NCBI RefSeq assembly: GCF_902459465.1
Contig: NC_047064.1
Coordinates: forward strand, 13,640,001-13,704,000
Direction of reading: 5' to 3'
Length of the DNA: 64,000 nucleotides
Origin: Asterias rubens
Lineage: Eukaryota
Position numbers and translations under genes: made by a program. This document shows, one piece after another, positions 4,467 to 62,730 of this stretch. How positions within the stretch are numbered: position 1 is the stretch's first letter; each line of letters starts with the position of its first letter. The notes below the pieces were generated by a model. The model did not search any database. It was not told the origin of the DNA and saw only the letters and a program-made list of their open reading frames with translations.

Positions 4467-7400
4467 CTAATCTACACAGCCCTGCAGAAAATCTAGAAGA
4501 GCCTTAGTGCGCAACTTTCTGGGCATCTTAAACTGATTATAATTGGCCGTAGAGGTCGCTATAATGTGATCTTTCAGTTTATTGAAGGAGCCAGGGCGAA
4601 CGACGGCAACGCGAGCCTCGCAGATTGTGCCCACTTTCCGGTACTGCTCGTAGAACTCGTGCTGTTTCCGCAGAGATTTGTCGAACTGAAATAAAATTGG
4701 AGAATAGTCATTTAAGTTGTATACACCAAAGGTATTTGTCATAAATAAAGGTTTGGCTATTTGTCATAAATAAAGGTTTGGCAAGTTGTAAGGTGATGTC
4801 TGTCCATGTAGGACACTTACATAATGTGACGATTTAAATGAACATTTCAAGTCGTTGTTTATTTAGGAGATATTACATACAATATCTCGACTATTCTTTT
4901 TTAGTCCGCACGATTAACAGAGTATTTGAAAAACTACTAAAGCCTAAAGCCGATGTTTCGAAAACAAGTATGTCCGAGACAAAAGATGAACTTATAGACA
5001 AGTCTAAAAACATGGTCTAAACGGCATATAAAACAAATTGTTACAAAGTCTATGTATTTACCATTGACATCTGATCAGCAGATAATCGAATCTCCTTGTC
5101 TGATTCGAGCTCAACGAAAAGCAAATAATACATGTCGTATGCACCACCTGGAAGCAAGACAAAGTGGTACAAATTTAGTTTCTGTTTTTACATTTGTCAA
5201 AAACAGAATGAAAGTTGATGTTTACTTTGTTCCTGCCTATTAAAGGAACACGTTGCCTTGGATCGGTCGAGTTGGTCTTTGAAAAGCGTTTGTAACCGTT
5301 TGTTATAAAATGCATATGGTTAGAAAGTTATTTTAAAAGTATAATACAATGATCCACACACATTTGCCTCGAAATTGCGTGGTTTTCCCTTTTAGTTTGC
5401 GAACTAACACGGTCGGCCATTTATGGGAGAGTCAAAAATTTGACTCCCATATATGGCCGACCGTGTTTGTCGACGAGGTAAAAGGAAAACCACGCAATTT
5501 CGAGTAATGTGGCTCATTGTATTATACTTTTAAAATAACTTTCTAATCATATGCATTCTATAACAAACGGTAACATACGCTTTCTAAAGACCAACTCGAC
5601 CGATTATTGTTAAAAATTACGCGGCTAATTTACTGCCCAAATGCATAACAAATGCACGGGTTCTGTTCCTCACTTCCCTCCCATGCACAACTTCAAATTG
5701 TTACCATTTTTGTCATCGTGCAAAAGTGGGCTCTCTGCGCATGTCCATTCTACTAGAGTAGCTCCATCCCATCCTTCTAAGCTTTCTTGAATGGCTTTGT
5801 TGACCACCAGTTTGTTAATCTTCTCACTGCGTAGATTCAGTAGCTCTCCAGTTCTAGAAATGAGACCAACGTAAATCAAACCTTTCTAGTGATTGTTATG
5901 TCGCCTTATTGTTCAACCCAAAAGACCCTTTTCATGAATATTTTTTTTATGCTCATTACATTCATACATGCGTACATACCCTTTTGGTTGGAAAATGCCA
6001 TAAGGTTGTGCATCAAGCACACGATGTTCCCTCATGTTTCTAAACATAATTTTAGTGCGCAAGCGCTAATGTGCAATATTTCGTGGGAAGGGGTAGTAAT
6101 TGTTGTATTGATTATTTTTCTAAGCTCTTGCACGATCAACTCAATATGTAATTTAGTGCTGGTTTCACTCTAAAAGCACCCGGACAAGAATTGACCCGAA
6201 GTTCTCGTCCAGTGAGCTGACCCATTTACGGGTCTGTATTACCCAAAATCTGTCTCAAAATGATCACGAAAATGTTCAAACCATGGAGGAAGAACTGACG
6301 CATGCAATTCAATTTTAAATTCCATTTTTGTAAAATACAATTTCTGGGTCGGCCTGAACCAAAAACTGAGCCCAATTTCATGGATCTGCTAACCGCCGAA
6401 TTATGCGCTTACGATCACGATTCCCCGCTTGACATGCTAGCGCCGAATTTCTGTGATATGTATTAGTAACGTGGAGTACGCACGCGCACAAGCCAAAATT
6501 TGCCGCTAACCCGTGAAATACGCTTGCCGTAAGCATAGAATTCGCTGCTTCCGTGAGCGCCGATTCTGTGCTTACGGTAAGCAGAGCCATGAAATTGGGC
6601 CCTGGTCTTTGACATTTACCACAGGTGTCCAGAGCTTTTAATGTCGGTGGTTCTTTTTACGCTGAACCATTTTAAAAGTTGTAGAGATACGTAAACATGG
6701 TTGAATAAACAGCACCAGAAAACCTGCTGGTGTCTCTGGTAATTCTGTTCGCTGCAGATTTTGTCCCGAATATGGGAATACCAGTGGGCGCTATTGCGAG
6801 AAGTTTGTACGCAGTTCTCCGTATCGGAGAGAATCTCTGGGGGACACAATTCATTTGACTATCACAACGGTTCAGTATTTACCAAGACTCTGTGGCCCAG
6901 GGTTATGGACGTCAGGCTGATCTGGAAATTCTATAAGAAATGGGATTAACTTGGATTCTGCCAAAATTTGTATGACCCATTTTATGGGCAAGTTTGCACA
7001 TATTTTGGATCTTCTTGACCCAAATGGGTCAGGCCTCAATGGGAACCGGTTCGGGGTAAATTCTACCCCGGAATTGCAGAGACTCAACGGCGCACCCAGG
7101 ATTATGTTTTTTGTTTTTTTTTGTTGGGGGGGGGGGGGGGGGGGGGCTCGAACCAATTTATTGGGTGGGGTCCAGGGGCGAAGCCCCGGTGGGGGTCCAG
7201 CTCTGAGCTTTCTGGCGTTTTGGGGGTGAAAAATCAAGCCTCTTTCTGCACAAATTTAGAAGAAAAACATACTTTTTAAGCACTTCTGATTCATATAAAT
7301 GTATCGTCTACAATTACGAACTGCAAAAATCAGTCAATAATTCAGCAGAGGTTTTTATTTTAAATAGTAATGCTGCGGACGTGGTTGAAAAGAGAACATT

Positions 7401-10400
7401 ATAGACGTTGCTACCTACTTTTCATCACCCCCCGAGCCCCCCCCCCCCTTGGGTGCGCCGTTGCAGAGACTATATAGTTTAGAAGTACGGTAAATAGCCA
7501 TATGTACTGGATATGGTGACCTGGAAAGCAGCAAAAAGATGAAAAAGCAAATAGCTGTTTTTTGAGTGCATTGATGAGTGTGCAGAAAATCAGTGTAGAG
7601 TTACGAGCTACTAAAATAGTAGGCTTTTAAAGGTGGTGAATAAGCCCGATTCTTGTTTTCAATCTTAATGTAAAAAAAAAAAAAAAAACATGAAATGATC
7701 CACCTATTACCTGTACGCAACGGTAAACACTGGGCAACTCTCAATGAAATCCACAACCTCGACCACATCACCCATACGGTAACGGTAAAAACCAGATATG
7801 GTCGTCATGGCTATCTCGTACCGTTTGCCAACCTCGACCTCATCCATTAACAGCGTCTCCGGGTTCTCTTCGGAACTGGATTGGGAAACAGAATAAGTCT
7901 AATCATGGAGGAAGGAAGAGAAGGAGCTCGAACGAAGGGACTTCAAAAGTCGCACTTGGTTCTTCACTCAACCATGGTGTCGTATGTCGTATGGATATAA
8001 TACAGAAAAACAACTTTTTTGAGACCTGATAAAATTTGTGTACACTTGTGCTCACCAAATCGAAAAACACAATTAATCGGTCGTCCAGCTGGAGGTCTCC
8101 TATCTTTTTCCACTGGTCAGACAGGGGCATTGTCAGGGTATTCTTTTGTTACTCTGCGGTTTTGCGGGTCGTTCGAGCTCCTTCTCTTCCTTCATCCATG
8201 GTCTAATCATGGTGTACGGTTATTGTACATTGTCTATCAAACCACTTCCTGAAGCAGAACTGAGGCAGACCCTTGCTCTAGGGCTGTGTTAATCACACGT
8301 GCCCCCCAAGATGGAAGAGTTTGGAACGCTAGGTGGCAGCAGACTTACCACGAAAAATCCATTGTTTACATACAGTTCTGAGCCTGCGAACAATTCCTGA
8401 AAAAATTGATTTATCTGGTATGTCTGCTGCCACATAGTGTCCTCTAAAGCCTCCCATTGCAATGATTAATTTGACCATGTGTCATTATACCGCCTTTCTA
8501 TAGGCTGAACCATACTCATATCCAGTACTGCTCATTATCGCATTTTTTTCTAGTCTTCATCGGACCATATCGGACTGTCCTTGCTCTATGCTCAGACCTA
8601 CCTCAGATGTTCTGGGATTAACTCAATCAGCATGTCGTTAGGGAGGAACGTGTACTGCTGTGGTGTCTTATCTTTCCATGTATTAACGCCAATAAACCCT
8701 TCTGTGCACCCATAGCCTGACGTGTATAGTGGGACACCTGCAGTGAAGATAATTTGCGTAGAATAACTATATTATGCTCAGTTGATTTCACGGGAAAACT
8801 AGTCTAACTTCACTTCTTCATCAAAACTTCTTTAAAAGAGACGCCTAGACTTGCCTCAAATCCCAATCCCGTGCCATCGCCATAAAACTATTGTTTTGTG
8901 ATGCTCTGCATTCCCCAATCTGTTCCCCAACCATTCTGGGACCATAATATCAACATTTTGACGGCGGGTATACTTAGGGAACTCTCGCACCAGAATTGGA
9001 CTTGAACCAAGCCTAACGATAACGCGACTTGAATCAAGCCTAGGAGACGCCATGACACAGGTGGGCGATCCTAATATTATGACTTTTCTCTTTTCGATGG
9101 GTGAGGGCGTGTGGACTATTTTGTCAGGAGGATCAAAAACATGTACATGTACTATTATGCAGTTTTATACATGAAAGTTTTGCCAACCAGTTTAACCTTG
9201 CCATCCCACCACCAAGACTGTATTATTAGTTGAACAAACATTGTGAACTTTGTGTTAAAATGCCGTTCTCACACATAATTACCTTTGGTATATCTTGCAT
9301 CGAGCTTCTTTATGTACCCAGAGATGTCGACAGACAATACATGGGCAACAAAAGGCCAGATTCTACGCATGATGCCCACGAAGCCTTTTGCAAACTCCCT
9401 CCTCAGTTCGTCTGCTCGAGCTGGGTCTGCCGTCAAAGCTGCGTCCAGAGACCGTCGAATTCCCTCATCAAGCTGTAACTTCGGGTTAACCCTTCCTAGA
9501 GTCAGATCCTCCAGGAACATCTCCTGTTCGTCTTCCAGCATTTTCATTGCCCTGTAGACTTGCGAGGTAAAAGCCCCAAAAAACTGGCAGATATTTTTGT
9601 CCGTGAGACCGAAGAGCATGCTGACGTAAGTGGCTTCGAAATCGGAGGAAATCTGGAAGCCACTGGGCGGCATGTTCTGGACAGTGGACATAAGAAAATT
9701 TGAGGCGGTACTATCAGGGAAAAACAACACTGGCGCAATACGTGCGCCAGATTTTGTAAATTTTTCCGCGGGCTTCGAGTAAAGAAAGACCATTTTCTGT
9801 ACTGAGTCTGATGGATAGAGTAATCTTGAAACAGCGTTGCCTGCTTTGTGATAATAACTTGAAGTGACCATTGGGATAAGCTTGCCCTTTCCTGTTGTGC
9901 CAGACGAAGTTCCAAATCGCTCCAGTGTTGCCGCAACGCAGACGTTCTTTTCCCCGTCAGCCAGCCTGGTGAAGTAATCTCGATAGTGTTCATACTTAGT
10001 GAGTGGATGCTTCTCACGGAACTCTTGAAGAGATTTGATGTCGCTGAAGCCATGTCTCATGCCGTACTCCGTCTTCGCATCACGGGCGAGCAGCTTCAGA
10101 AGAAAACTCTCATGCTCTTTCCTTGGACGTTTCCAGATTTTTTGCATGTTGCTGTAAACTGAAGGCGCTGTGAGATCAATAATCTGGAAAAACAAGTACT
10201 TGACCAATAGAGTCGCCAAAGTGTGGGTTTCGGAACAACGTTGAGTTGAGATGTGAAGAGCTATCATAGTTGATAGACCGCACAGACCGGCGAAGATGCC
10301 TGGGGAAAAATAAAACAAAAACAATAGAACAACTTCACAATCACATCGGACTTCCTTGGCCGCACTTCTTTGCCTGCATCCTGTTTCCCATCTGCACATC

Positions 10401-13400
10401 AAATCTCTCTCACGTCAAGGGTATTAAGGTGAATGGGTTTCTTTTGACTCTTCAAAATCTATGCTTTCTTTTTTTTCTCTTCATGTCCGCACCTCAAGTG
10501 TTCTTTTTGTTATGTTATTTAGGCGACTTCCAATAAAAACAAATTATCCAACAACAAAAATTAATAATTTTGTGTTGAACAAAAAGAGGGGAAACAGCGG
10601 GTCGGGATTTGAACCCTCGATCTTCGGAAGCGTGCCGGTGCCATAGGGGATTCCACTACGAACATTTTTTATGTCCGACTTTTGGAGAACATGTGCTGAA
10701 GGGAAGGAGATTGATTTAAAAGAAGACACTATCACTACACGTATTTCTTTACATTAGACCGCATCACAATTAATACTCAGTACGTGCACGTAAGGCGTGG
10801 TTTGATGTGCTCGGCACGCACCTCAATCGAGCACGATGCTGGTCCATCGCGCACAAAATCGGGTACACCCCTTTGTTCCATGATTTCTATGTTTTGACAC
10901 CCCGGGCACCCCCATAGTGTTGTTGTATTTCAACACAAACTCAAGCGTGTAAATCATCAGCAATTTTTTCGGAAAAAGATCGTATATGAACATTGCGGCG
11001 ATATATAGAATTCGGAATGTACTACCCTTATTGAACTAATTCTTCAACATTTTGCGTAGCGGCGATTATTAAAAGAAAATGGAATTCGGGCTTTCTTTCC
11101 CTTTAAAAAATAACCCTTTTCGATGGGAACATTTGCAGAGCGGCGATGTTTACTAAAACATGGAATTCGGGCTTTCTTTCCCTTTTTGAAATAGGCCCCT
11201 AATCCTTCATTGGGTGACACAGGGCGATATTTATAGTCACCTGGAAGTGGAATTTTTTTTAAATAAAGCTTTTGTCACTAAAATATGTGTTTTTATGAGA
11301 GGAATGTGAATAAAAAGTTAACTAAGGTCTAAAAATATTAGTTTTGATTGTATTTACAAATTTACGAGTAGGCCCCGACCCGAGAGGGCGCTGTTCGTGA
11401 CGTAATTCAAGGCGCGATATTTGAAGAGAAAATTTGTAGTCAGGCCCCCGTACTCTACGTCTGGGAACATGGCACATCAAAACAAATTCAGACACGATTT
11501 TACACACATACGTATATTGAAACTTGAACATGTTGAACGCCTAGTGGTTTTTACAAAAGCTATTGCTGCTATTTTTATTTAACTATGCGACTTTTTAGTG
11601 ACCAAATGGGTTGTAAGATGTGGGTCTGCCTACGTATTATTACAGAAATACGGCCACGGAGCAGACTGCACGCACGCACTATGGCTGCTGTATAATGTGC
11701 GGACGGTCACATAGGACCTGCACGCACGGTGAATCGCATGCGGTACCAACAAAAAATCGTGTCACTTGGCAAAAGCTAAAAACATACCCTCAAAGTTCAA
11801 AGTTCTCCTCTGGGTTCGTCACGTATTTCAGATACCTTCTTCGACTTCCCACTAGCTGGAAAAATTGTTGGGACGGCGTCGTAATTAAGAATGGCTCTTC
11901 TCGTCATGTCAAAATGAGTGGTGTATCCCGGATTCGAAGCACGACGGCTCGAAGTGTTCGCTGCATAGCGCTGAAAAAGACGTCGGACCGGACCACTTTG
12001 CTCTAGTTAAGCTGACTTTGGCAGCCCACAACCGCCTATACTTGGGATCTGCAGGAAACAGATGAAGACTGACCCCATCTTAAGTTGTTTTGCTGCATTC
12101 AGCAGCAATACACCTGGTCGGCATTGCCGGGAAAATGCCAGAAAAAACTTTTTTCGCAGCCTACAAACTCACGTCTTAGAATTACATGTACTTTTGCACG
12201 TGTGTTTATCTACGCATCGAGGGGGGTCTATGTTTGATCGAGGCAAAGTCTTCCTTTTCCTACGTCACAAAAGGGGTAGGCGGAGTCAAACCCCCAAGCA
12301 CTTAATTAATTTTTTAACATATAAATCGTGACAAAAAATTACTAAAAAAATTGTTTTATTGTTAATAAACATATACTCTTATGTTTAAAAGAAAAAATTC
12401 CTATTTCCAGGTGCCTTTATAATTAATACATGGAATTCGGGCTTGCTTTCCCTTTTGATAGAATCCTTCAATGGGAGTATTTGCACATGGCGATATACAT
12501 GGCATTATGGCTTTCTTTCCCCCCTCTAAAAATAATCCTCCAACAGGGGACATTTTCATAGCGGCGTAAGAACAATGGAATTCAGATTTTCTTTCCCTTT
12601 TGAAAAAATCCTTTAATGGGAAAAATTTGCATAGCATAATATTTATTAATACATGGAATTCGGGCTTTCTTACACTTTTTTCAAATATTACAGGCCTTGC
12701 GGCGATATTTATTAATATGTGGAATTCGGGCTTTCTTTCCCTTAATTGAAATAATCATTCAATGGGGGACACTGCATTTGCATCTTTTTATTTACTTGAT
12801 ACATGGAATTCGGGCTTTCTTTCCCTTTATTGGGACATTGTCGGCGATTGTTTGGTATTATAGGAGCCGATATGCCTGTTTTGAAAGATCAGGATCAGAG
12901 GTTTGGCAGTTAAAACGAACAAACGACGTATGCGTAGAAATTACAGGATGTATATGCCATCACAAACGAACAAGCATACACTATAGATCGACCGTCTTCC
13001 ATGCTAACACACAGCACACTACTTAGTGCGATTGTGCGATCGACCGTAGACTTGATTTCAATTCTTAGATCGCAGTTATTCTTCTCCATATCAGCCACGA
13101 AAAACGCTCCCACATCACGCGCCTCGCCTGAACGTCCGACGTCATACTTTGAGGCTCATGAATAACGCCAGAGACCGGCATCCAAAACCGGCGTGTAGAT
13201 TCACCTTTGACCTCTGTCATTTCACATGCATTTCCACGTACAATACTATACATGTACATAGCGCTATACAGCACAGTGCATGTCATGTAACATACACAGT
13301 GTACAAGTGCGATCACTAGACCGTGACTGAGTAGCTGTAGCCGGCTAGCAAAGTGCCCCTTGAAACCAGGACCGTGTTTACATAGGCCATTAGGCCTCCC

Positions 13401-15304
13401 TAGTTGGTTAACGCTAGACATACATGACATAATCTATTACTCTAGGATCTATGTATAGCGTTAACCAAACAGGTACATGTACATGATTAACTGGCTAAAC
13501 ACTACATGTAGGCCAAATGCACTGGTGGTCGGGTAAGAGGCCCAGTAGGTATCTAGCATGAAACGCTACCTAAGCGAACGTAGGATAAAAAAAAACCAAT
13601 TAAATTTCCATGGAGATACGAACTCGCAGGTATCAGTGATGTAAGCGCGACTGATGACCACTAGGCCATGAGGCCCAATGCATAATACGAGGGTTAACAT
13701 GTATTTGTATCAACAGAGGGGATTATAATCCGGCGAATTAATTCTCGTGTCATGATTTTGCAAACATTGTCACTAAATATGAACTGCTAACGCCTTTAAC
13801 TATGAAGTAGGGTTAAAATGTAGTATAAGATGCCTTTAGGGGTTTTTGACGATGACGTTGTCGTCGTCAAAAACCCCTATTCAATTACGCACGTTCGTCC
13901 ACGGAGGACGCCACCTCGGAGTCTAAATTTGACATTTTTTCACTCATTTCTCAAAAACTACAACACCACAGCAAGTAATATTTTAAGGGAAGCTTTCAAC
14001 TGTCATTATCTTCAAACTGTTTAAGTTTAGTGTAATTCTGTGGACACCATGGTATGTCGTCGTCGTCAAAAACCCCTATTTATATACGCACGTTCGTTAA
14101 ACGAAAACCCTAAGCCTTCGTGTACAAAGCATATTTGTCCACAAAGCATATTTGTCCAGAACTCGGTTATGAAACGAAGAAACAGAGACTGCGCTGTGGT
14201 CCAGAACGTATGTAGAAAAACAAGAAAAAGAGACTTGAGTAGACTCCTCTCAAGAAGTCACAACTCATGATAGGTACATACTGAATTGCATTTACCATAG
14301 AGAATGTTTAACAATAACATGGAAGTGACTGCATCCAGTTATGTTCAAACGCCTAGACTCATCTCAAGAAGTCACAACTCATGATAGGAACAAACTGTAT
14401 GGCATTTACCAAAGAGAATATTTAACAATAACATGGAAGTGACTGCATCCAGTTATATTCAAATGAAGATTATGTGGCTAATTAATGAAGATTTTTAATT
14501 TTGTTTACATTTAGAGGTAAGCTTATGTTCTAAGCTTCAATTTGGTATATGATTTCACTCTTTTGAAGTTATGGTCTAGGAGATTAGGTTTAAAGAAAAA
14601 AACGTGTGCAATTGCTATGGGTTTTAGGCAGAAACAAAGATCTCGACAGAAACAATACCTGTTCCGACTGTAGGTCGGAACAGCTAAAAACAATTCTGCA
14701 ATAAAAAATGAATGAAATTGAGTGAGCACATGTATTTAATAACAGAAGTTACATCCTTATCCCTGGAAAGGTATAAATTTATCAAAATGTATTTTCAAAC
14801 ACAAGTGATAAGTCAGAAATAAACAATTTTGTTTTCTTTCTCAGTCATGGCAAAGCCCCTGCGATGCACCCCTCTCAGCCAGTTTTTCTGATTGCTCCTA
14901 ACGTAAAGTCCTCATTCTGGGGCCCATATTGCCCTTTATTAGAGTAAATACCAAACAGTGTAATTGCGCAGTCGCCGGTGTAAAGCTCCGGACAATGCAT
15001 GCAATGGGCAGATCGTCTGTCATTCATCGGAGCCATTGATGAATGGAGTTTTATAGGGCCAGTTACTTTACCAAGGCAATTTCAGTGCAGCAAACGTTAT
15101 ACGTTCGCTTATGTAGCGTTTCATGCTAGATACCTAGTGGTACATTCTACACCACAAACTCAATGGAGGTATAGTCAATTTACCTGCAGCGGCTTTCACC
15201 GTCCATGATCCGTCACTGGCCCAGCAGTAGTTGGCAGCATACGCCGTGACAAACCCAGACAACATTACCCAAACCAAACACCGAAACTTCCATGTTACCG
15301 CCAT
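4467..15304 (-). CDS. GHDC: GH3 domain-containing protein, paralog A (630 aa, 7 coding exons)
   Basis: Exons (minus) 15184-15304, 9283-10299, 8602-8737, 7711-7875, 5705-5853, 5062-5147, 4467-4685. All GT-AG, phases compatible, total 1893 nt. Motifs FGTSSGTTGKGK, SGYGCTEG, GFYRYRMGD, NQFKMPRK. The symbol denotes the family (GHDC-like); one-to-one orthology is not established. Confidence 0.9.
4733..4782. repeat. 25-bp tandem duplication in the last intron of paralog A
   Basis: tatttgtcataaataaaggtttggc x2. Confidence 0.85.
5240..5604. mobile_element. Foldback (near fully palindromic) Kolobok-like MITE, family K2
   Basis: Starts ttaaaggaacacgttgccttggatcggtcgagttggtc. Arms mirror around gggagagtcaaaaatttgactccc. 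Right end truncated. Copies at 27881-28095 and 48185-48576. Confidence 0.8.
6371..6605. mobile_element. MITE with cccaatttcat...atgaaattggg TIRs
   Basis: Terminal inverted repeat shared with the element at 57208-57443. Confidence 0.6.
7085..7463. mobile_element. hAT-type MITE (379 bp) with perfect 8-bp TSD
   Basis: TIR caacggcgcaccca / tgggtgcgccgttg. CAGAGACT duplicated at 7077-7084 and 7464-7471. Internal poly-G and poly-C tracts. Confidence 0.85.
7904..8200. mobile_element. MITE (297 bp) with about 32-bp TIRs in intron 3 of paralog A
   Basis: catggaggaaggaagagaaggagctcgaacga / tcgttcgagctccttctcttccttcatccatg, flanked by duplicated gtctaat (7897-7903, 8201-8207). Confidence 0.8.
8318..8460. 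mobile_element. Short palindromic MITE, family P (ggtggcagcagacttacc...ggtaagtctgctgccacc)
   Basis: About 140-bp hairpin element. Further copies at 19977-20125, 27424-27570, 42500-42658 and 61530-61658. Confidence 0.75.
10995..12850. repeat. Degenerate minisatellite (about 70-85 bp unit) split by a transposon insertion
   Basis: Core atggaattcgggctttctttccc at about 11079, 11160, 12430, 12507, 12576, 12652, 12718 and 12801. Units also share gcggcgatattt and aatcctt.aatggg. Confidence 0.8.
11235..12416. mobile_element. Kolobok-like non-autonomous element, family K3 (1182 bp), TTAT target duplication
   Basis: TIR agtcacctggaa / ttccaggtgcct with TTAT on both sides. Both ends are homologous to the TTAA-flanked element at 28386-28968. 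Confidence 0.8.
14241..14463. repeat. Tandem duplication, 2 x about 114 bp
   Basis: agactc.tctcaagaagtcacaactcatgatagg...aacatggaagtgactgcatccagttat x2. Confidence 0.85.
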
Positions 15305-16179
15305 TTTTGTAGTCGTCTTATATATATTGGTTGACGACCTGCAACTGTGGAGACAAAATGAACCTCAATGTTCGTTTCAATGCACTTTTACAAACAAGCG
15401 CTCGTAAATGCTGATGGTATAACAATGCACAATCCATCAAACAACTGACGTCACTCTTCAAGTCACCGGTTACATTAAGCATTGTTATACCTCGGTAACA
15501 AATTGTGAAGATTGATTGGTCGAGAACCTATGACGTAATGTGACAAAAATAAACAAGTATCTCGGCTATTGTACATGCGTTTTTGTTTACATGTGAACAT
15601 AACCTCGATCGTTCCCACCGTTGGTCCATTTCCAACGCATTTTGTACGAAACATCTGCGGGTTCGAGGGAACAGTGAAGACATTTTTTTGTACTAAATAT
15701 CAAACAAAAACAATTACTGTTCGTCTGCTTATTAAACTATGCAAACTCCGTCGTAATAATGTTTGAAGATTACAACAGAACTTAGGCGCCCTTTCCCCCT
15801 CGGGTGTACAAAACGGATGGACCCATTCACAGCGTGCAACAATATTGTGCAATGTCCAACCTTCGAAACCGCTAAGTCGTGCCATTGTACGTTTGACCTT
15901 TCATGCTATATCCTCGATTACGCCGCAGCCAAAAGACTGTTTACTTTTTCAACCTTTGGTTAATGATTAATAAAATATACCGAGCATTCCAGACTGTTTG
16001 TTGATTGCTTATTACACATATTTTTTGGGGGGGTTACAAACTTCCGGGTCAGAAATACCCGATTCTGGGTTCCGTGTCCTGGCCACCCGGGTCAGGCTGA
16101 CCAGGAAAAGGTAACTGTTGCGACACCCGCTGCCAAAACATAGGATTCGAACTGCCTTTAGCTACCGGGCAATTTTGGT

Positions 16180-16370
16180 AGTCTAGTTGGTAAGACACTG
16201 CTCTAGAATTACAACGGTCGTGGGTTCGAATTCCACCCGAGTAATCTACCTGTGATATTTTTTCACAAGACTCGGGAAAGTACTGAGTAAACACTGCTAG
16301 CACACATGGGGTGTATGGGTAAAACAAAACAAAATTAGTATCCTTATCCCCGAGGCAAACTTAACATCGA
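16180..16370 (+). mobile_element. tRNA-derived SINE fragment
   Basis: A-box-like ggtagtctagttggtaagac and B-box gggttcgaattcc, followed by a non-tRNA body. Confidence 0.6.
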
Positions 16371-17057
16371 TTACAGGAAAAAGTAGTTGAAAGCTGGATT
16401 TTAACTCAAATTTTGCGTCAATGATTTGACCCATTGTGATGACACAGAGTTCCGGTTGAAACTAACCCCAGAGTGGGCAGGCCCCACGGAACCCAGATCC
16501 GGCGTGGCATGAGATTCTGTCCCCCAGAGATTATGTCCCGTAAATGGCAAACTGTGTCCAAACTTCTTCTGATAGCGACTTTTTTTATTTTATTTTAAAT
16601 CCTCCTCCTCCAACCCATGTTAGTTTTCCATATGGGGGATGGACAGAGTCTCCGGTGTGGCAGGAGATTCTGTTGGTGTGGGTTGCGTCTAATTTTAGGT
16701 TTATTATTATCATACCTCTCTCGACAACGGTTGATTGTGTGCAGACAATGAATAAAAGAGAATGGTTTTTGTATAGCATTGTGTGGACCTCTATTGAGTG
16801 TATGGCATGCAAGGTCATGCTCAAACGTACACACTAACCAAACGCATCTAGTAGGCTATATGGCATTGATGATTACTAGCCTCAACAAGTGACGTTAAAG
16901 CTTCATAATGCAATGCGCCTTCGGTTCAGCAAATACCTTCACATGTTCGCGACATTTATCCGATAAATCTATCCAATATTCATAGGTTGATTTTGTCTCC
17001 GTCCGGACGGGTTCTTGCACGGTTGCAGGTCGGCCAATAAGGGGACTTGTGGCAGTA

Positions 17058-26034: not shown

Positions 26035-26102
26035 AAAGTTTTTTTTCTCAACACTGTACAGAACTGGAATAACTACTTTATTGGTTGTTGTTGACTACAC
26101 AG

Positions 26103-32100: not shown

Positions 32101-32223
32101 ACCAATGACAGTTTTTATCATCCACGATACATCACTGGTCCAACAGTAGTTGGCAGCATACGCCGTCACCAACCCAGAAAACATCACCCACACCAAACAG
32201 CGAAACTTCCATGTTACCGCCAT
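26103..32223 (-). CDS. GHDC: GH3 domain-containing protein, paralog C (634 aa, 7 coding exons)
   Basis: Exons (minus) 32103-32223, 30419-31435, 29921-30056, 28125-28289, 27635-27783, 27263-27348, 26103-26333. GT-AG, open frame. Motifs FGTSSGTTGKGK, SGYACTEG, GFYRYRLGD, NQFKMPKK. Confidence 0.92.
26396..26772. mobile_element. Kolobok-like MITE, family K1
   Basis: ttaaaggcactggacattattgg...tgtgcagtgcccttaa. Confidence 0.8.
27881..28095. mobile_element. Foldback MITE family K2, internally deleted
   Basis: ggtcgagttggtc...accaactcgtccgatccaaggcaacgtgtcccttt. Ends about 30 bp from the exon 4 donor of paralog C. Confidence 0.75.
28386..28968. mobile_element. Kolobok-like element family K3, short derivative (583 bp)
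   Basis: ttaa|agtcacatggaa...ttccaggtgact|ttaa. A further internal fragment lies at 29080-29320. Confidence 0.8.
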
Positions 32224-33126: not shown

Positions 33127-33161
<35 letters not shown>

Positions 33162-44903: not shown

Positions 44904-44924
44904 TGATAGTTAGTAGTTTATTAT

Positions 44925-47460: not shown

Positions 47461-47622
47461 GTTTGACACGCCATACTGGGTCGACTCTTTACAGCGTGTA
47501 TTGTTTAAGGCATTGGGTCGACCCGCTGGTTTAGGCACGGGAACGGAATACCACTTTCGTGGTCGTCAGCGCCGTTCACTTTGCATGTGGTCCTGCTCGG
47601 TTGTTGCGCTGGAGTTTCGAAC

Positions 47623-53600: not shown

Positions 53601-55082
53601 GCACCATCACAAGAGGAGGTACATCATTAGACTGGGCCCTGTCTTTAACCGCATATCTAAAGACACGTACTTGCTTTTCAGAACCAGTGAGTTCATTGGG
53701 TACAATTCATTTCATAAGACAGCTTTCTATATCTGTGTTTTGATTGGTCACAGGTGACGTTTGGCAGCTGCACTTGCAGTCGTCTGCATATGAATCTATG
53801 TGAAAGGTGAACATGGACTGGGGTTTACTTAAATGTTAGAGGCCACTATCTGGCGTTATTCACGAGCCTCAAAATATGAGGTCAGATGTTCAGGTTAGCC
53901 CATCATCGTACGATACCGTTGTTTGTGCGAATACAAGATCGCGAATGCGAGGCGAATTTTAGTGACAGTAGCAATATATTTAAGTATGTAAAACTTGTTT
54001 CTTTCGGCTTTAAGATTGTGAGTATGACATGTTTTACACGCTGTTTGTGGAGCTAGAATCTAAGAGCAAGATCCACTTATCTGCCGAGCAGAAGTCACTG
54101 GTAAGTGATTACAGATAATGTTGAACTTAGAACCGCGAAAATACAATATATCTCCCCATCCCCACAGCTTCCATACCTTTTCTTGTGTTAAACATTATGA
54201 GGTAATTACTCACAAAAAAGTTTGCATAAAACCTTTCTTGATTAAGAGTAATGGGGAGAGGTTGACGTTATAAAACATTGTGAGAAACGGCTCCCTCTGA
54301 AGTATATAGTTTTCGAGAAAGCAGTAATTTTCCACGAATTTAATTTCAAGACCTCAGATTCAGAATTTGAAGTCTATGTTTTTTTTCTTTCATTAATATC
54401 TCGCAACTTCGACGACTGATGGAGCTCAAATTGTCGCAGGTTTGTTATGTTATTCATACGTTAAAATACACCTGTGAAGACTAGTCTTTGACAAATACCA
54501 GTAGTGTCCAGTGTCTTTAATATTGACATACTTCATTCAAGAAATCAAGAGTGCAGGAAATTATTAAAACCAAAGAGGTGGAGATGGGCAGGTAACCTAC
54601 AGCAAGGAGGAGGCATGACAACAGCTGGATAAGAAAAAAGAGGGAGACCAAACAGAAGATGAAGAAAAGGGCATTGCTTGGCAACATACAGGGTAGGATA
54701 GAGTGAAATGAGAATTGGTGAACAGGCTTTCCTCCTGCAGTAGAGTGAAACACAGGCTAGACAGGACAGGACTTCTTTTAAACTACGGCCACCCCTATTA
54801 AAGCGATATTGTTTTCATCAGTAAAGAATCGGTTTTTAAAAACTTTTTTTTAATTTTCAGTTCGATAAATCTCTGCGGAAACAGCATGAGTTCTACGAGC
54901 ACTATCGTCACATCGGCACAATATGCGAGGCTCGCATATTAGTCGTTCGCTCCGGATCTTTCCACAGACTGCAGGAGTTTATAATGGCGACCTCTACGGC
55001 CAGCTATAACCAGTTCAAGATGCCGAAGAAGTTGCGAACCAAGAAGATGGTGGATTTCATGTTAACAAATGTTGATGAATAA
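47623..55082 (+). CDS. GHDC: GH3 domain-containing protein, paralog E (627 aa, 7 coding exons, divergent)
   Basis: Exons 47623-47746, 49083-50090, 51526-51661, 52245-52409, 53147-53289, 54015-54100, 54861-55082. GT-AG, open frame of 1884 nt. Motifs FGTTSGTTGKSK, IAYGSTEG, GLYRYRLGD, NQFKMPKK. Confidence 0.9.
48185..48576. mobile_element. Foldback MITE family K2 (full length)
   Basis: ttaaggaacacgttgccttgg...ccaaggcaacttgtttctttaa. Central palindrome atgggagtcaaaaatttgactcccat. Confidence 0.85.
51008..51380. mobile_element. Kolobok-like element family K4, uninterrupted
   Basis: Ends accgatgttgtgcgattgctttaa; reverse match to 38661-39382 without the K1 insert. Confidence 0.7.
53325..53557. 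mobile_element. MITE family H in intron 5 of paralog E
   Basis: at|gggttcgtttagcttccctggg...gggaagctaaacgaaccc|at. Confidence 0.8.
54200..54520. mobile_element. Kolobok-like MITE, family K1
   Basis: K1 core, right end gtagtgtccagtgtctttaa. Confidence 0.75.
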
Positions 55083-57047: not shown

Positions 57048-60000
57048 ATGGCGATAACTTGGGGAGTACGGTTTTTGGTGTGGGGATTTATCTCGGCGTT
57101 TCTCTCTACGATTACTGTAAAGTACTGCCTGACCAGTGAAGCATCAACTCTTCTGAAAGGACTTGCAGGTAAGGCTAAATGTAGGCTATAACCATACCAG
57201 ACTAGTCCAGGGCCCAATTTCATAAAGCTGCTTAAGCACAATATTTTGCTTAAGCAAAAAAAATCCTTGCTCAGTAAAATCAGATTACCGGCCAAGACTC
57301 CACTCAATTGTATGCTAAGTAAACAACAGCTAAATACCAGTCACAAGCAATGTTTAATATGTGTCATGACATTTTTGCCAGTAACATGTGCACAATAAGT
57401 GAGCTATATTTTGCTTAAGCAGCTCTATGAAATTGGCCCCTGGCCTTTATTACTTTGTCAATGGTCATTAAAGGCAGTGGACACTATTGGTAGTTACTCA
57501 AAATAATTATTAGTATAAAACCTTACTTGGTGTCGAGTAATGGGGAGAGGTTGTTGGCAAATAACATTGTGAGAAACGGCTCCCTCTGAAGTGCAAAAGT
57601 TTTCGAGAAAGAAGTAATTTTCCACGAATTTGATTTCAAGACCTCAGATTTAGAACTTGAGGTCTTGAATATCAACCATCTAAACGCACACAACTTCGTT
57701 TGACAAGGGTGTCCTTTTTCCTTCATTTATCTCGCAAGTTCGATGACAGTTTGAGCTCAAATTTTCACAGGTTTGTTATTTTATGCATATGTTGAGATAC
57801 GCCAACAGCGAAGGCTAGTCTTTGACAATTACCAATAGTGTCCACTGCCTTTAACTCGTTGTATAACTTGGTCTATAACGCGGACACTAACCTTGTATCC
57901 TCGGTCATATTAAGACAGTTCTCTAACCATATTGGTCTCTTACTCGGCTAACAACACGATTTCTAATTCGGTCAATATAGGCCATCCTAACCCGTGCTCT
58001 TACTTTGTCTTTTATTCGGTCACTAATCTTATCTGTAACTCGGTCACCTACCCGGTCACTTTGTAAAGCAATTTGACACTTTCCTGTCTAACTCGGTCAC
58101 TTACCCGGTCTTCCCGTCGGTCTCTAACTTGGTCTTTAACTCCGTTACTAGGTCTCTAACTCGGTCTATTAAATATTAAACTGGGACTCATTCAATCTCT
58201 TACCCCCCCCCCTATCTCATAAACTAACACAATTTATTTGGATGCCGATTTCAGGGGTTTTTGCCGTTGTCATCATCCTGTCGACCGTGGTGGCTCTCCA
58301 TATTTCGACTCTTCAGTGTTCTGAAAGCCATACACTGAAAACCCTACTACTGCAGTATTTCATGGTGAAACAAATTGATTTCTTCGTTCCGTTTCTCCTC
58401 TATAAGATGACGAAAGCCTGGAAGAATCCCATGCAGGCGCAAGAGAAGCTTCTTCTGAAGCTGCTTGCCCGTGATGCGAAGACGGAGTACGGCATGACAC
58501 ACGGCTTCAGCGACATCAAATCTCTTCAAGAGTTCCGTGAGAAGCATCCACTCACTAAGTATGATCATTATCGAGATTACTTCACTAGGCTGGCGGACGG
58601 GGAAAAGAACGTCTGCCTGGCGGCAGATATTTACCGATTTGGAACTTCGTCTGGTACAACTGGAAAGGGCAAGCTCATTCCCATGGTGTTATCGTCAATA
58701 TCAGGCAGCTTGATTTTTTCAGTCATGAGAATTGTCAATCCGCCCAGTCCTGTCCGGAAATTGGCCTTGTTGTATTGTAAGCCTACTCCACAGAAGACCA
58801 AAACAGGAATTGACATTGCACCTGCATTTTTTATGCCAGACTATGCAAAATTCTACACGGATATGTTTCAGAATACACCGTTTTGTGCATTTCAAATTTC
58901 CACCGATTTCGAAGCCACCTATGTCCACATGCTATTTGCCCTGACGGACAAGAACATTTTTCAATTTCTCGCTCCGTTTGCCTCGCAAGTCTACAGAGCA
59001 TTCGCGATGCTTGAAGAAGAACAGGGGATGTTCCTAGAGGATCTGACTCTAGGAAGAGTTAACCCGAAGATACAACTCGATGAGGGAATTCGACGGTCTC
59101 TGGACGCAGCTTTGACGGCAGACCCAGCTCGAGCAGATGAACTGAGGAGGGAGTTTGCTAAAGGCTTCGTTGGCATCGTGGGTAGAATCTGGCCTCATCT
59201 CCATTATGTCCTGACTGCCGACATTTCAAACTTTTTTAAGAAACTTGACGCCAAATACACAAAAGGTAAGGAGTATAATATAGAACAGTTTAAATCCCAA
59301 ATGTCCTTCGGGATGGGACGTTAAGTCGTAGGTCCCGTGTGTTGTGTGATGTGCATACACTTATCGTTCGGATAAGGGTTTCGCTGCGGTGCTTTCTGGT
59401 ATGATTGGCTGCAGATTGCAAAACTGCACTTGTGTAAATCATTACATTGTGCTGTGTAAAATAACCTTATAGCTCTTATACTGAGATCATAGCCCCGCAT
59501 GCGTACAGACTGAGTATAAATATTTCTGTTTATGGCACCTTTTGTAGATCAGGTTTTTGACCGTGACTTAAATCCCTACTATCTGTGAATGAAGGTTTAT
59601 GTGATAAAAAAAAGTGAAATTATCAGATTAATGTTTTCAAGGCGCGTGTATAGGCTATCCGATGTAAACGCTAAAAATAATGTCGTCACTCTGAGACGTA
59701 GACATGAATAATTTTTTGCGAAATTGTTTTCCTTATTTCTTAACAACTACAGCTGCTTGTAACAAGTAGAAGGGGCGTGGTCGTGTCAGTTGCGCGTTGA
59801 TTCTCCGCTGTGCCACGAGGGTTTTCCAGACCGTGTGGTTTTTCTCCCTCGGGAAAAATCAAACACTCTTGATCTCTGGCTGTGCTCCGTGGTCATAATG
59901 GGTTGATGTGGCTGGCAGCCAGAGGCGCCCTTGCATGCCTGCTTCTCAAACACGTTGTAGCCGCGTCCTTCGCAATTTAGCTCTTATATGCTTGTGATGA

Positions 60001-62730
60001 TGGTTAGCCTCCCAAATTATTATTATTGGAACATTTTAAAGGAAGCTTTCTACCATCATTATCTTTCAACCGTGTAAACCTGTGGATGTGGGCTTGTATG
60101 GCCTGCCCCCGAGGAAATATTTCAATATGGACAATAGGTCCTCACTAAGCGTTTCTCTGTTTCAATGGGTCCTAGTAATTTGTGTGCAAAACCAATAGGG
60201 ATTCCTTCAATACAGGAACATCAGAAAGTACAATCGGTGTCCTATAACGTAATGGTCAAACACGATGTGGTGTTGGCATGTCTACTACTGATACCAGAGG
60301 ACATTAACAAAAGGGATCCGGGAAAAAGGCACACCGGGGACAGTCCTCGGTAGATTTTGTGTACAAAACCAATGGGGACGTCTGAAAAATAAAATGTCCA
60401 AACAATGGGATAACAAAGAGAAGTCCTCGGTCTGCACCATGAACATGCCTGCGTGCGTGCGTGTGTGTGTTTCGTGTCGTACAAAAATTACCCAAACCCT
60501 TGAATCGGCTTTTATGATTGGTCCGTCTCACACAGGAACTAAGCTGTTTTCTGGAGCTTATGGTTGTACTGAAGGTTTTATTGGCGTCAATCTCTGGATA
60601 GACAAACCACAGATGGAATATGTACTTATTCCAAATGACATCATTGTTGAGTTCATCCCTGAAAGTCTTGTGTAAGTACACATTAAGGTGTTTTATTTTC
60701 CTGACGCAAGTGTCACGACCGGGATTCGAACCCACACTCTGCTGAACAGAAGCACCAAAGTTTGAGATCGGTGCTCTTATCCACTCGGCCACGACACCGC
60801 GGTACTTCACATCATTATAACTCGAGATAAGACTCGTCTGAACTCTATGTAAAACTTCACCCTAAGTGTAATAAATCTCCTATGAGCTTTCGTGGCCCTG
60901 AGAAGTACACTCGTTTAACAACTCGACGTTTTGATAAGTATGCTCTGATTGTCTTCGAGAGAATGCTCGACTATTTGCTATGTTGCTTAAGTATTGCCGA
61001 TAAGGTTAAGCTTGAAGGGTAAACAAACAATCAAATTATTTGAGAAACATTTCACTTCGAAGTAATCTGGTTATGGAAAAAAACAAGTTTTTATCCCCCA
61101 AAGTTTGAATCTGAGAAACGTTACTGTCAGATACGTTTCGTAGATTGTGAATTCAAATTAAGGATTATTATTCCTGCAGGGAACAAAACCGCTACCACAT
61201 TTTGAAATGTGAGTTTCACAGACTAGTGCTATCGTAAATAAATATTTCTATATGATTAAAACAATAATTTTTTTGATTGATTATTTTTCTTTAACTAATA
61301 AAGTGACGAGGAGAATCCGGATACTTTGTTTATGAATGAGGTCGAGGTTGGTCAACGGTACGAGGTTGCGTTAACCACATTATCTGGGTTTTACCGTTAC
61401 CGTATGGGCGACGTGATTGAGGTAGTCGGACACCATGAGAAGTGTCCGCTGGTTACGGTCAAGTACAGGTTGGTGAACCATTATTTATCCGATTGCTTTT
61501 ATCAAAATGCTGCAATAGGAGACTTAAGAACTATTGGTGGTAGCAGACTTACCACAAATTTGTCATCGTTGGTTTAGTTCATGTGCACATTACCGACAAC
61601 CATAGGTTTACCTGGTAAGTCTGCCGCCACCTATTAGCATCCCAAAAGTCTTCCATTGTCAGTGTGGCATTTAAAGGGGCACATATACTCAAAATTTCTC
61701 AAAAGGTTGCCGTTTGGAATTTCTCCTTTAGTCAATCACAATTACAAAGTTTAGCAGATGAAATGGCAATGAAAAAGCTTAGCCCGAATCAAGAAGAATG
61801 CTGTTGAAAATAATATGCTTGAAGTGGCGAGACCAATTTCAGTATGGGTTGAACTCGACAAGACCGGAACCCTGTACTTCATAGTGAAAACCCTCCCCCA
61901 AGATAAGAAATGTAATTTGTGGCTTAAAAATCCTCTCTACATTTCTAGAACTGGAGAGCTACTGAATCTACGCAGTGAGAAGATTGACGTACTGGTGGTC
62001 AACAAAGCCATTCAAGAAAGCTTAGAAGGATGGGATGGAGCTACTCTGGTAGAGTGGACATGCGCAGAGAGCCCACTGTTGTACGAAGATAAAGGTTATA
62101 GTATTTTGTTGTTTTGTGTGACTTTCTTGTCTTTCATTTTGCCACATCAACAACATAAGCTTGGTATAAAAAAAAAAAATTATTTTGTGGTTTATTGATA
62201 TTTTGTGGTTTGAATTTTTTTTAATGATATTTTCAAATATGTGCTTCGTCCTTCGGATTGGACGTAAAGCCGTTGGTTCCGTGTGTTGTGTAATGCACGT
62301 AAAATAACCCAGTCAGTTGATATTGCAGAAAGAAGGGGTTCACCCTGGTGTTCCTGGTTTGCTCGACTGCACATTGCCAACTTTGTAAATCATTACACGG
62401 TATCAAAACACTTGGTCCAAAAACGATGAGTTCTCAGTATAAAATCTTTATGAACTGTGTATTCTCTACCTCTAACTAAGAGGAAAACCAAATCCAACTT
62501 AAATTTTGTTTAATTATCTAACAATTTTTTGGGTTTTGTTATAAACCTTGTTGTAAACCTTCCCAAGGGCATTGGATTTGTTTAAATTAGGAATACAATT
62601 TATAAGACACACAAATAATATAATTATTAATTGTCTTCTTGCAGAGTGTGATTACGACATGCATTACCTGCTCTTCGTCGAGTTAGAATCAGAAACAGAC
62701 ATACACCTATCGGCTGATCAAAAGACACTG
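57048..62730 (+). CDS. GHDC: GH3 domain-containing protein, paralog F (partial: coding exons 1-6; final exon not found in window)
   Basis: Exons 57048-57168, 58255-59265, 60536-60671, 61304-61468, 61949-62094, 62645-62730. GT-AG, open frame. Motifs FGTSSGTTGKGK, GAYGCTEG, GFYRYRMGD. No FDKSLRKQHEF-type exon seen in 62731-64000. Confidence 0.88.
57208..57443. mobile_element. MITE with ccagggcccaatttcat TIRs in intron 1 of paralog F
   Basis: ccagggcccaatttcataaagctgcttaagca / gcttaagcagctctatgaaattggcccctgg. Confidence 0.75.
57468..57854. mobile_element. Kolobok-like MITE, family K1 (full length)
   Basis: ttaa|aggcagtggacactattgg...ccaatagtgtccactgcct|ttaa. Confidence 0.88.
57860..58170. repeat. 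Degenerate 12-bp repeat tract (taactcggtcwc)
   Basis: Many ctcggtc / cttggtc / cccggtc units, often in 12-bp phase. Confidence 0.6.

What the first reader, a model, noticed from the sequence alone, without database searches (positions are those of the whole stretch)
4467..62730. Six-gene tandem expansion of apparently active GH3 acyl-acid amido synthetases in an animal genome: candidate specialised-metabolite conjugation locus
Seen: at least six paralogs, five complete and frame-intact, all keeping the adenylate-forming motifs: P-loop (S/T)SGTTG.K, Y(G/A/S)(C/S)TE, YRYR(L/M)GD and the C-terminal QFK(M/I)P(R/K). Established: these correspond to GH3 motifs I-III and the catalytic-Lys motif (QFKMPR in Arabidopsis JAR1). 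Plant GH3s ligate amino acids to auxin, jasmonate or benzoates via an acyl-AMP. Vertebrates have a single GHDC of unknown function. Inference: retention and diversification of six copies suggests a lineage-specific amide-forming pathway. If the host is a sea star, amino-acid or taurine amides of steroidal or fatty acids (a compound class reported from asteroids) are plausible products. The substrate is not known from sequence.
Basis: partly seen in the sequence, partly recalled or inferred. Interest (0 to 1): 0.88.

Follow-up and report, generated by a model that had tools for sequence, protein, structure and literature searches.

The report
Sea-star GH3 amide-synthetase gene cluster
This stretch of the common starfish genome holds six intact, transcribed copies of a GH3-type enzyme that plants use to join acids to amino acids; similar multi-copy sets occur across echinoderms, and their substrates are unknown.

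Summary
The window is Asterias rubens. It carries six GH3 genes of seven exons each, all with GT-AG introns and no internal stops. Five are complete; the sixth lacks only its last exon, which lies beyond the window end. They are not a simple tandem array: orientations are A-, B+, C-, D+, E+, F+.

All six keep the three nucleotide-binding motifs, and all carry the C-terminal Q-F-K-x-P lysine (for F, in its RefSeq protein). A model of gene B (pLDDT 95.5) matches plant GH3 crystal structures. Genes A and B are spliced in RNA runs exactly as modelled. All six have 1:1 orthologues in A. amurensis (95-98% identity). dN/dS is 0.23-0.34.

Multi-copy GH3 families occur in every echinoderm class with more than one gene sampled, so this is a phylum-wide pattern, not a sea-star speciality. 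Five of the genes (B-F) already have RefSeq models. The substrate is untested. The steroid-taurine idea remains speculation, although such amides are reported from the genus Asterias.

Two additions. The proteins carry an N-terminal two-helix membrane anchor. The genes are mosaics: some blocks are homogenised by gene conversion, while an old, divergent segment after the P-loop has escaped it.

The parts
4467..15304 (-). GH3 gene A, complete, 630 aa. Exons 15304-15184, 10299-9283, 8737-8602, 7875-7711, 5853-5705, 5147-5062, 4685-4467.
   Evidence: Spliced model with GT-AG at all introns and no stops. RNA-run joints fall exactly at introns 2-6, and X1 contigs show 0 mismatches. The orthologue is A. 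amurensis P0005, 94.6% identical. No A. rubens RefSeq protein was retrieved for it.
17058..22743 (+). GH3 gene B, complete, 634 aa, identical to XP_033624241.1. Exons 17058-17178, 18050-19066, 19706-19841, 20319-20483, 21040-21188, 21780-21865, 22513-22743.
   Evidence: 634/634 identity to P0003. Pfam GH3 N, M and C domains are all present. RNA joints match introns 2, 4, 5 and 6. AF2 model has pLDDT 95.5.
26103..32223 (-). GH3 gene C, complete, 634 aa (RefSeq XP_033624676.1 sits in the same 90% cluster). Exons 32223-32103, 31435-30419, 30056-29921, 28289-28125, 27783-27635, 27348-27263, 26333-26103.
   Evidence: The orthologue is A. amurensis P0002, 95.9% identical.
38101..44903 (+). GH3 gene D, complete, 634 aa, identical to XP_033624239.1. 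Exons 38101-38221, 39978-40994, 41236-41371, 42160-42324, 43395-43543, 43655-43740, 44673-44903.
   Evidence: 634/634 identity to P0001. Intron 5 is only 111 nt, in frame and free of stops.
47623..55082 (+). GH3 gene E, complete, 627 aa, the most divergent copy (P-loop TTSGTTGKSK). Exons 47623-47746, 49083-50090, 51526-51661, 52245-52409, 53147-53289, 54015-54100, 54861-55082.
   Evidence: Its own exon 1 has a canonical GT donor at 47747. A. amurensis P0007 has the same length of 627 aa. RefSeq XP_033624240.1 instead joins D's exon 1 to E's exons 2-7.
57048..62730 (+). GH3 gene F, exons 1-6 (aa 1-555 of XP_033624242.1); exon 7 lies beyond the window end. Exons 57048-57168, 58255-59265, 60536-60671, 61304-61468, 61949-62094, 62645-62730.
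   Evidence: 555/555 identity to P0006. There is no exon-7 match in 62731-64000.
18469..18708 (+). Gene B codons 181-260: the divergent segment directly after the P-loop. Homologous segments exist in all six genes.
   Evidence: Up to 4.1 different residues per column among the six paralogs. Identity is 46% within species and 43% between species. dS exceeds 1 for C-D and A-C. The segment is 87.5-100% conserved between A. rubens and A. amurensis orthologues. It holds the equivalents of AtGH3.6 pocket residues Y134, L175 and T193.
18259..18408 (+). Gene B codons 111-160: homogenised block 1. Block 2 is codons 301-350 (18829-18978), and a third block covers codons 481-500 in exon 5.
   Evidence: 98-99% identical among the species' own paralogs but about 70% between Asterias and Patiria or Acanthaster. 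dS is 0.11-0.17, against 0.2-0.4 elsewhere. Exon 5 is 92-95% identical in nucleotides among A, B, C, D and F.
15305..17057 (.). 1.75-kb spacer between the divergently oriented first exons of A and B; a candidate shared bidirectional promoter.
   Evidence: Gene models. An RNA contig covers 17002-17162. Promoter function is an inference only.

Best explanation
The locus is a conserved six-gene array of membrane-anchored GH3-type acyl-acid amido synthetases (ANL superfamily).

Mechanism. By homology with plant GH3 enzymes, each protein should bind ATP/Mg and a carboxylic acid and form an acyl-AMP with release of pyrophosphate. The C-terminal domain should then rotate about the hinge, letting an amine (an amino acid or similar) attack to give an amide plus AMP. 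This chemistry is inferred, not shown.

What is shown:
- Intact genes, with all nucleotide-binding motifs and the C-terminal lysine.
- GH3 fold.
- Transcription and correct splicing of A and B.
- Purifying selection and 1:1 orthologues in a second Asterias species.

What is inferred:
- Two N-terminal hydrophobic helices (about aa 5-29 and 34-58, with K6/R8 ahead of the first) form a hairpin. This would tether the catalytic domain to the cytosolic face of a membrane, which suggests lipophilic acids as substrates.
- The paralogs differ in acyl substrate. The segment after the P-loop and the positions aligned to the plant acyl pocket differ between paralogs, yet are conserved between species.

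Evolution. The array evolves by old duplications plus gene conversion. Conversion homogenises scaffold blocks and spares the specificity segment. The array is one instance of a recurrent, echinoderm-wide GH3 expansion. The substrates are unknown.
For: Family membership:
- Pfam GH3 N, M and C domains all score above their cut-offs.
- Sequence matches to ten solved plant GH3 sequences, down to E 3e-48 over about 525 residues, with motifs aligned.
- S173, G174, T175, E392, Y457, D461 and K611 are invariant in a 23-sequence alignment. In the 93-sequence alignment only E392 and D461 of these stay invariant; the rest are 90% or more conserved.
- Motif table for all six genes.
- AF2 model: pLDDT 95.5, pTM 0.92.
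- The 30 best Foldseek PDB hits are all plant GH3, E about 1e-40. AtGH3.15 gives TM 0.80-0.84 and rmsd 3.2-4.0.

Expression and selection:
- Exon-only coverage with exact GT..AG joints for genes B and A in RNA runs.
- dN/dS 0.23-0.34 across all pairs and 0.12-0.45 in every segment.
- Orthologue identity 94.6-97.9% overall, and 87.5-100% in the divergent segment.

Substrate pocket and anchor:
- 7 of 8 positions aligned to AtGH3.6 acyl-pocket contacts vary among the paralogs, against 46% of all columns.
- Hydrophobic N-terminal segments are modelled as helices.

The reaction mechanism is taken from PMC11253546 and PMC9894192.
Against: - There is no biochemical datum for any animal GH3. No paper on one was found.
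- Raw-read depth on the exons is low, about 0.3-4 in two RNA runs, and the tissues are unknown.
It rests on the existence of RefSeq models.
- The pocket mapping depends on an alignment of about 25% identity, in its least certain stretch.
- Membrane topology is inferred from charge distribution only.
- No segment shows dN/dS above 1, so diversifying selection is not demonstrated.
- The copies could be partly redundant.
Confidence: 0.7

Rival explanations
1. Phase-II style detoxification. The array conjugates dietary, algal or xenobiotic carboxylic acids (benzoates, phenylacetates, indole acids, oxidised lipids) with amino acids for excretion. It would evolve by birth and death like other chemical-defence gene families.
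For: Recurrent, independent, clustered expansions occur in many echinoderms. Pocket-aligned positions vary between paralogs. Selection is moderately relaxed, with omega about 0.3. These are typical traits of xenobiotic-metabolism families, which is general knowledge and not tested here.
Against: Strict 1:1 orthology and high conservation of each pocket segment between two Asterias species fit fixed endogenous substrates at least as well. No induction or tissue data exist.
Confidence: 0.25
2. The enzymes make taurine or amino-acid amides of steroidal (cholestan-26-oic type) or fatty acids. This would be a CoA-independent conjugation route for sea-star polar steroids.
For: Polyhydroxysteroid-taurine amides (microdiscusols A-F) are reported from Asterias microdiscus, as cited in PMC7281419. 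The membrane anchor and the small or hydrophobic residues at pocket-aligned positions (G/A at the M337 and A339 equivalents) would suit a bulky lipophilic acid. That last point is inference.
Against: Nothing connects the genes to these compounds. Equally expanded GH3 sets occur in sea urchins, brittle stars and sea cucumbers. I did not check whether such amides are reported from those groups.
Confidence: 0.12
3. Signal-molecule homeostasis as in plants. The enzymes activate or inactivate small carboxylic-acid signals (oxylipins, retinoid-like or indole acids) by amino-acid conjugation, with each paralog handling one signal or tissue.
For: This is the established role of plant GH3s (PMC11253546). 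Distinct pockets are conserved across species. Low transcript levels would suit regulatory enzymes.
Against: Pocket-aligned residues do not match the auxin-type pocket: Y134 becomes V/L/I/F and M337 becomes G/A. RefSeq names such as 'IAA-amido synthetase GH3.9' vary even between isoforms of one gene and look like similarity-based labels rather than evidence. No such conjugates are known to me in echinoderms.
Confidence: 0.15
4. The copies are largely redundant products of neutral duplication and conversion, or have lost the transferase step, so that the number of copies has no special biochemical meaning.
For: Gene conversion is active in the array. Multi-copy sets are commonplace in the phylum.
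Against: All six are intact after divergence with dS above 1 in the unconverted segment. omega is well below 1. All six are retained 1:1 in A. amurensis with paralog-specific segments conserved. All catalytic motifs are kept.
Confidence: 0.1

Closest known systems
Plant GH3 acyl-acid amido synthetases (AtGH3.15, AtGH3.5/6, OsGH3-8, VvGH3-1, JAR1, PBS3)
   Same: They share the three Pfam domains, the three nucleotide-binding motifs and the C-terminal Q-[FY]-K-x-P lysine motif. They share the two-domain fold with a hinge (E 3e-48 by sequence, about 1e-40 by fold). Presumably they share the two-step adenylation and aminolysis chemistry.
   Different: Only 22-26% identical. The sea-star proteins carry an extra N-terminal extension of about 100 residues with two hydrophobic helices, whereas the plant crystal chains align only from about residue 100. 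Pocket-aligned residues differ from the auxin type. Exon structure is that of an animal gene. Substrates are unknown.
Vertebrate GHDC (GH3 domain-containing protein; function unknown to my knowledge and not found in the paper library)
   Same: It is an animal GH3 homologue with the same three domains and an N-terminal hydrophobic segment (Fundulus P0045).
   Different: In the tree, GHDC groups with amphioxus, mollusc and coral sequences (SH-aLRT 98), apart from the echinoderm clade (91) that holds the window genes. PF25146 (GH3_N_vert) scores 18-22 bits, below its 34.1 cut-off. GHDC has one hydrophobic segment rather than two. It is single-copy in humans (general knowledge), against 7 or more genes in A. 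rubens.
GH3 clusters of other echinoderms (Patiria miniata, Acanthaster planci, Amphiura filiformis, Diadema, Lytechinus, Strongylocentrotus, Holothuria)
   Same: Same protein architecture, including the anchor. They are multi-copy and often sit on one contig. The Patiria cluster (4 genes) and Acanthaster cluster (3 full-length genes in the tree, plus a partial one) form the sister clade of this array.
   Different: They are independent sets of paralogs. The scaffold blocks are homogenised within each species and differ between species.
PaaK-type aryl/acyl-CoA ligases (ANL superfamily)
   Same: Next-best structural matches, at E about 1e-11 to 1e-12. They share adenylate-forming chemistry.
   Different: TM only 0.3-0.6 and 12-15% identity. 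They have no GH3 domains and use CoA as acceptor.

Membership tests
GH3 acyl-acid amido synthetase family (Pfam PF03321 + PF23571 + PF23572) | All three GH3 domains (N-terminal, central, C-terminal) above the curated cut-offs | tested here: met
   P0003 (B), P0001 (D), P0006 (F) and P0004 (E) score 196-207, 75-80 and 47-59 bits against cut-offs of 23.6. Exon 2 of all six genes scores E 1e-58 to 1e-61. A and C align full-length with no gaps in these domains.
GH3 acyl-acid amido synthetase family (Pfam PF03321 + PF23571 + PF23572) | Nucleotide-binding motifs I (T/S-S-G-T-T/S-G-x-x-K), II (Y-x-x-[ST]-E) and III (Y-R-x-G-D) | tested here: met
   Present in all six genes. They align to the same motifs of OsGH3-8, VvGH3-1 and AtGH3.6.
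GH3 acyl-acid amido synthetase family (Pfam PF03321 + PF23571 + PF23572) | C-terminal-domain lysine in the Q-[FY]-K-x-P-[RK] motif | tested here: met
   A-E carry it in the window. F carries it in its RefSeq protein. It aligns to NQYKVPR, NQYKTPR and GQYKTPR of the plant structures. K611 is invariant in alignment A1 and 90% or more conserved in A2.
GH3 acyl-acid amido synthetase family (Pfam PF03321 + PF23571 + PF23572) | Two-domain ANL-type fold with a hinge | tested here: met
   AF2 model with pLDDT 95.5. The top 30 PDB hits are all GH3, with TM up to 0.84 to AtGH3.15.
GH3 acyl-acid amido synthetase family (Pfam PF03321 + PF23571 + PF23572) | ATP-dependent adenylation of a carboxylic acid followed by amide formation with an amine | not testable with these tools
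   Needs enzyme assays. The mechanism is taken from plant work (PMC11253546).
Auxin (IAA)-amido synthetases, group II GH3 (as the RefSeq names suggest) | Conserved acyl-pocket residues of AtGH3.6 (Y134, L175, T193, Y195, I312, M337, A339, S340, S341; PMC9894192) | tested here: not met
   The aligned positions read V/L/I/I/F/V, L/V/M/M/F/F, Q (V in E), V/I/I/I/I/A, G/G/G/A/A/A, G/G/A/S/G/G, C (S in E) and T. Y195 has no counterpart. Only I312 is matched, by I in four of the six copies. The alignment is uncertain in the 181-260 stretch.
Vertebrate GHDC orthologue | Groups with GHDC in a tree and matches the vertebrate-specific N-terminal domain PF25146 | tested here: not met
   GHDC falls in a separate clade with amphioxus, mollusc and coral sequences. 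PF25146 scores 18-22 bits, below its 34.1 cut-off.

The most novel reading that the evidence does not exclude
Echinoderm GH3 arrays may be a CoA-independent, membrane-bound amidation system. It would attach taurine or amino acids to steroidal (cholestan-26-oic) or other lipid acids, with each paralog's unconverted pocket segment setting the acid it accepts. This would explain metabolites such as the Asterias steroid-taurine amides. It would also give the first biochemical function for any animal GH3/GHDC protein.
Probability: 0.1. Interest if true: 0.8.

Novelty: new member of a known kind. Interest (0 to 1): 0.5.

Why it matters
I found no assigned function for any animal GH3/GHDC protein. 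Here that family appears as six distinct, conserved, expressed paralogs whose likely substrate-pocket segments differ. That gives a natural panel for substrate screening.

If an activity is found, it would define an amide-forming route in animals that bypasses CoA thioesters, and it could explain some echinoderm conjugated metabolites.

The array also shows gene conversion homogenising scaffold blocks while a specificity segment is spared.

The claim is tempered by three facts. Five of the genes (B-F) already have automatic RefSeq models. The expansion is common across echinoderms. No function is demonstrated.

Tried and rejected
- Searching 'GHDC' mostly returned bile-acid abbreviations and gave no functional paper.
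- Searches linking GH3 or IAA-amido synthetase to echinoderms or metazoa found nothing relevant.
- The primary plant structure papers (PNAS 2016, Plant Cell 2012) are not held. Pocket residues were taken from PMC9894192 instead of from memory.
- My first automatic model of gene E used a GC donor. Reading the sequence showed a canonical GT at 47747, and the model was corrected.
- F's last exon was looked for inside the window and is not there.
- No GH3 fragments or relics lie outside the six genes.
- Positive selection as the cause of the hypervariable segment is rejected. dS is as inflated as dN there, and omega is 0.2-0.33.
- 'Asterias-specific expansion of all six' is rejected as proven. On the unconverted segment, E and F are unresolved against the Valvatida copies, and conversion biases the full-length tree.
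- The word-indexed protein searches scored only the 8000 candidates sharing most words. Per-species gene counts are therefore lower bounds.
- The Atlas search added nothing on taxa.
- Other long ORFs in introns and spacers have no Pfam match.

Full report
**What is there.** Six ORFs of 325-414 aa each match the GH3 N-terminal domain at E 1e-58 to 1e-61. A six-frame motif scan finds the P-loop in all six genes. It also finds Y-x-x-T-E, YRYRxGD and, for five genes, QFKxP[RK], in the order expected for split genes. A protein search returned Asterias rubens RefSeq proteins at about 100% identity, so the window is A. rubens.

Using those proteins and tblastn I built spliced models. Every gene has seven exons: exon 1 is 121-124 nt, exon 2 about 1 kb, and five short exons follow. 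All introns are GT-AG and there is no internal stop. Genes B, D and F (exons 1-6) reproduce XP_033624241, XP_033624239 and XP_033624242 residue for residue. Gene F's exon 7 is not in 62731-64000, so it is cut by the window end. No GH3 relics lie elsewhere.

Orientation is mixed. A/B are head-to-head with 1.75 kb between their first exons. B/C are tail-to-tail, C/D head-to-head, and D>E>F tandem. Similarity between copies is confined to exons. Introns no longer align except for dispersed repeats.

**Are they GH3 enzymes?**
- Full-length proteins carry GH3 N, M and C domains above Pfam cut-offs.
- They match ten distinct solved plant GH3 sequences, down to E 3e-48, across about 525 residues with the catalytic motifs in register.
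- In a 23-sequence alignment S173, G174, T175, E392, Y457, D461 and K611 are invariant. In a 93-sequence alignment of animal and bacterial relatives only E392 and D461 of these stay invariant, and the rest are at least 90% conserved.
- An AlphaFold2 model of gene B is very confident (pLDDT 95.5, pTM 0.92). Its 30 best PDB matches are all plant GH3 structures, followed by PaaK-type ANL ligases.
- The best whole-chain fit is to AtGH3.15 (TM 0.80-0.84, rmsd 3.2-4.0 A). The other GH3 structures fit worse overall (rmsd 9-13 A), consistent with the known mobility of the C-terminal domain (PMC9894192; PMC11253546).

**Are they active genes?** RNA-run contigs and raw reads laid on gene B cover exons and not introns, apart from repeats. 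Their joints fall exactly at my introns 2, 4, 5 and 6. The same holds for gene A at introns 2-6, with mismatch-free contigs. This matters because no A. rubens RefSeq protein was retrieved for A. Depth in the two raw-read runs is low (about 0.3-4), and the tissues are not known to me.

Pairwise dN/dS is 0.23-0.34. All six genes have 1:1 orthologues in A. amurensis at 94.6-97.9% identity. The array therefore predates that split and has been kept intact.

**Extra features.**
- All copies, and other echinoderm GH3s, carry an N-terminal extension of about 100 residues with two hydrophobic segments. These are modelled as helices 5-29 and 34-58. The coral and bacterial relatives checked have none, and fish GHDC has one.
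- With K6/R8 ahead of the first helix, a hairpin that leaves the catalytic domain in the cytosol is the simplest reading. This is inference.
- The genes are mosaics. Codons 111-160, 301-350 and 481-500 are 96-99% identical among the species' own paralogs. The first two blocks are only about 70% identical between Asterias and Patiria or Acanthaster, and Patiria and Acanthaster show the same within-species uniformity.
- dS in the homogenised blocks is 0.11-0.17. It is 0.2-0.4 in the rest of the gene and above 1 in codons 181-260 for C-D and A-C.
- omega is similar everywhere (0.12-0.45). The 'hypervariable' segment after the P-loop is therefore old divergence that escaped gene conversion, not fast positive selection.
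- That segment is nevertheless 87.5-100% conserved between orthologues of the two Asterias species. Each paralog's version is under constraint.

**Pocket mapping.** I mapped the AtGH3.6 acyl-pocket contacts listed in PMC9894192 through the HMMER alignment. Seven of the eight alignable positions differ among the six paralogs, against 46% of all columns. The nucleotide motifs are fixed. None of the eight positions keeps the AtGH3.6 residue in all six copies; only I312 is matched, by isoleucine in four. The RefSeq names ('IAA-amido synthetase GH3.9' and similar) are therefore not evidence of substrate. The alignment is weakest in this stretch, so this result is tentative.

**How special is the expansion?** On full-length proteins the six genes plus their A. 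amurensis orthologues form a clade. It is sister to the Patiria (4) and Acanthaster (3) cluster genes. On the unconverted segment alone, only A-D remain a well-supported lineage-specific group, and E and F are unresolved. Conversion inflates the apparent species-specificity.

A. rubens has a seventh, dispersed copy (P0039). Named hits give the following lower bounds:

| Species | GH3 genes (at least) |
|---|---|
| Patiria miniata | 10 |
| Diadema antillarum | 9 |
| Amphiura filiformis | 8 (three on one contig) |
| Lytechinus pictus | 5 |
| L. variegatus | 4 |
| Holothuria leucospilota | 4 (three on one contig) |
| Strongylocentrotus purpuratus | 3 |

Single hits came from a crinoid, two hemichordates, amphioxus, a snail, an annelid, a barnacle and a coral. 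The all-against-all search found 458 representative clusters at E<=1e-30. Multi-copy, clustered GH3 genes are thus a general echinoderm trait.

**Function.** No paper in the library assigns a function to animal GH3/GHDC or mentions GH3 in echinoderms. Taurine amides of polyhydroxysteroids do exist in the genus Asterias (microdiscusols, cited in PMC7281419), but nothing ties them to these genes.

My best reading (0.7) is a set of functional, membrane-tethered acyl-acid amido synthetases with paralog-specific acyl substrates. Which substrates remains open among xenobiotic or dietary acids, lipid or steroid acids, and signalling acids.

**Verdict.** This is a new, uncharacterised member set of a known enzyme family. 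Five of the genes (B-F) already have automatic RefSeq models. The locus is of moderate interest, mainly as a tractable entry to the unknown biochemistry of animal GH3 proteins and as an example of conversion-shaped mosaic paralogs.

Noticed in passing
window 38101-38221 and 49083-55082: RefSeq XP_033624240.1 ('isoform X2') joins gene D's exon 1 to gene E's exons 2-7, so D and E are treated as one locus. E has its own exon 1 (47623-47746, GT donor at 47747), and the A. amurensis orthologue has the length that uses it. Whether the D-exon-1/E transcript is real was not tested.
   Followed up: partly
window 1550-2439 (-): A rhodopsin-type GPCR (PF00001) is split over two overlapping ORFs in different frames. 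These cover profile positions 1-127 and 152-228 of 260. This suggests a frameshifted or truncated receptor gene, or an unusual intron, next to the GH3 array.
   Followed up: partly
window 680-1055, 2557-2925, 26396-26774, 34930-35313, 38844-39192, 43790-44177, 45917-46312, 46527-46750, 54201-54520, 57468-57854, 63301-63732: A dispersed repeat of about 380 nt (70-90% identity, both orientations) is scattered through introns and spacers of the array. It is probably a SINE- or MITE-like element.
   Followed up: no
window 5262-5604 and 21314-21467: Palindromic intronic elements (85-91% self-complementary) attract extremely high depth in RNA runs: word depth up to about 2e5, and hundreds of raw reads with loose ends. 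They look like a high-copy, transcribed hairpin-forming repeat family.
   Followed up: no
window 43544-43654: Intron 5 of gene D is only 111 nt, in frame and free of stop codons. Retaining it would insert 37 residues into the C-terminal domain rather than truncate the protein.
   Followed up: no
window 5705-5853, 21040-21188, 27635-27783, 43395-43543, 61949-62094: Exon 5 is 92-95% identical in nucleotides among A, B, C, D and F, against 75-87% for most other exons. B, C and F encode a nearly identical peptide. This points to a recent conversion tract.
   Followed up: partly
window 3368-3845: A 240-nt unit is directly repeated in tandem at 98% identity (3368-3607 and 3606-3845), upstream of the array.
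   Followed up: no
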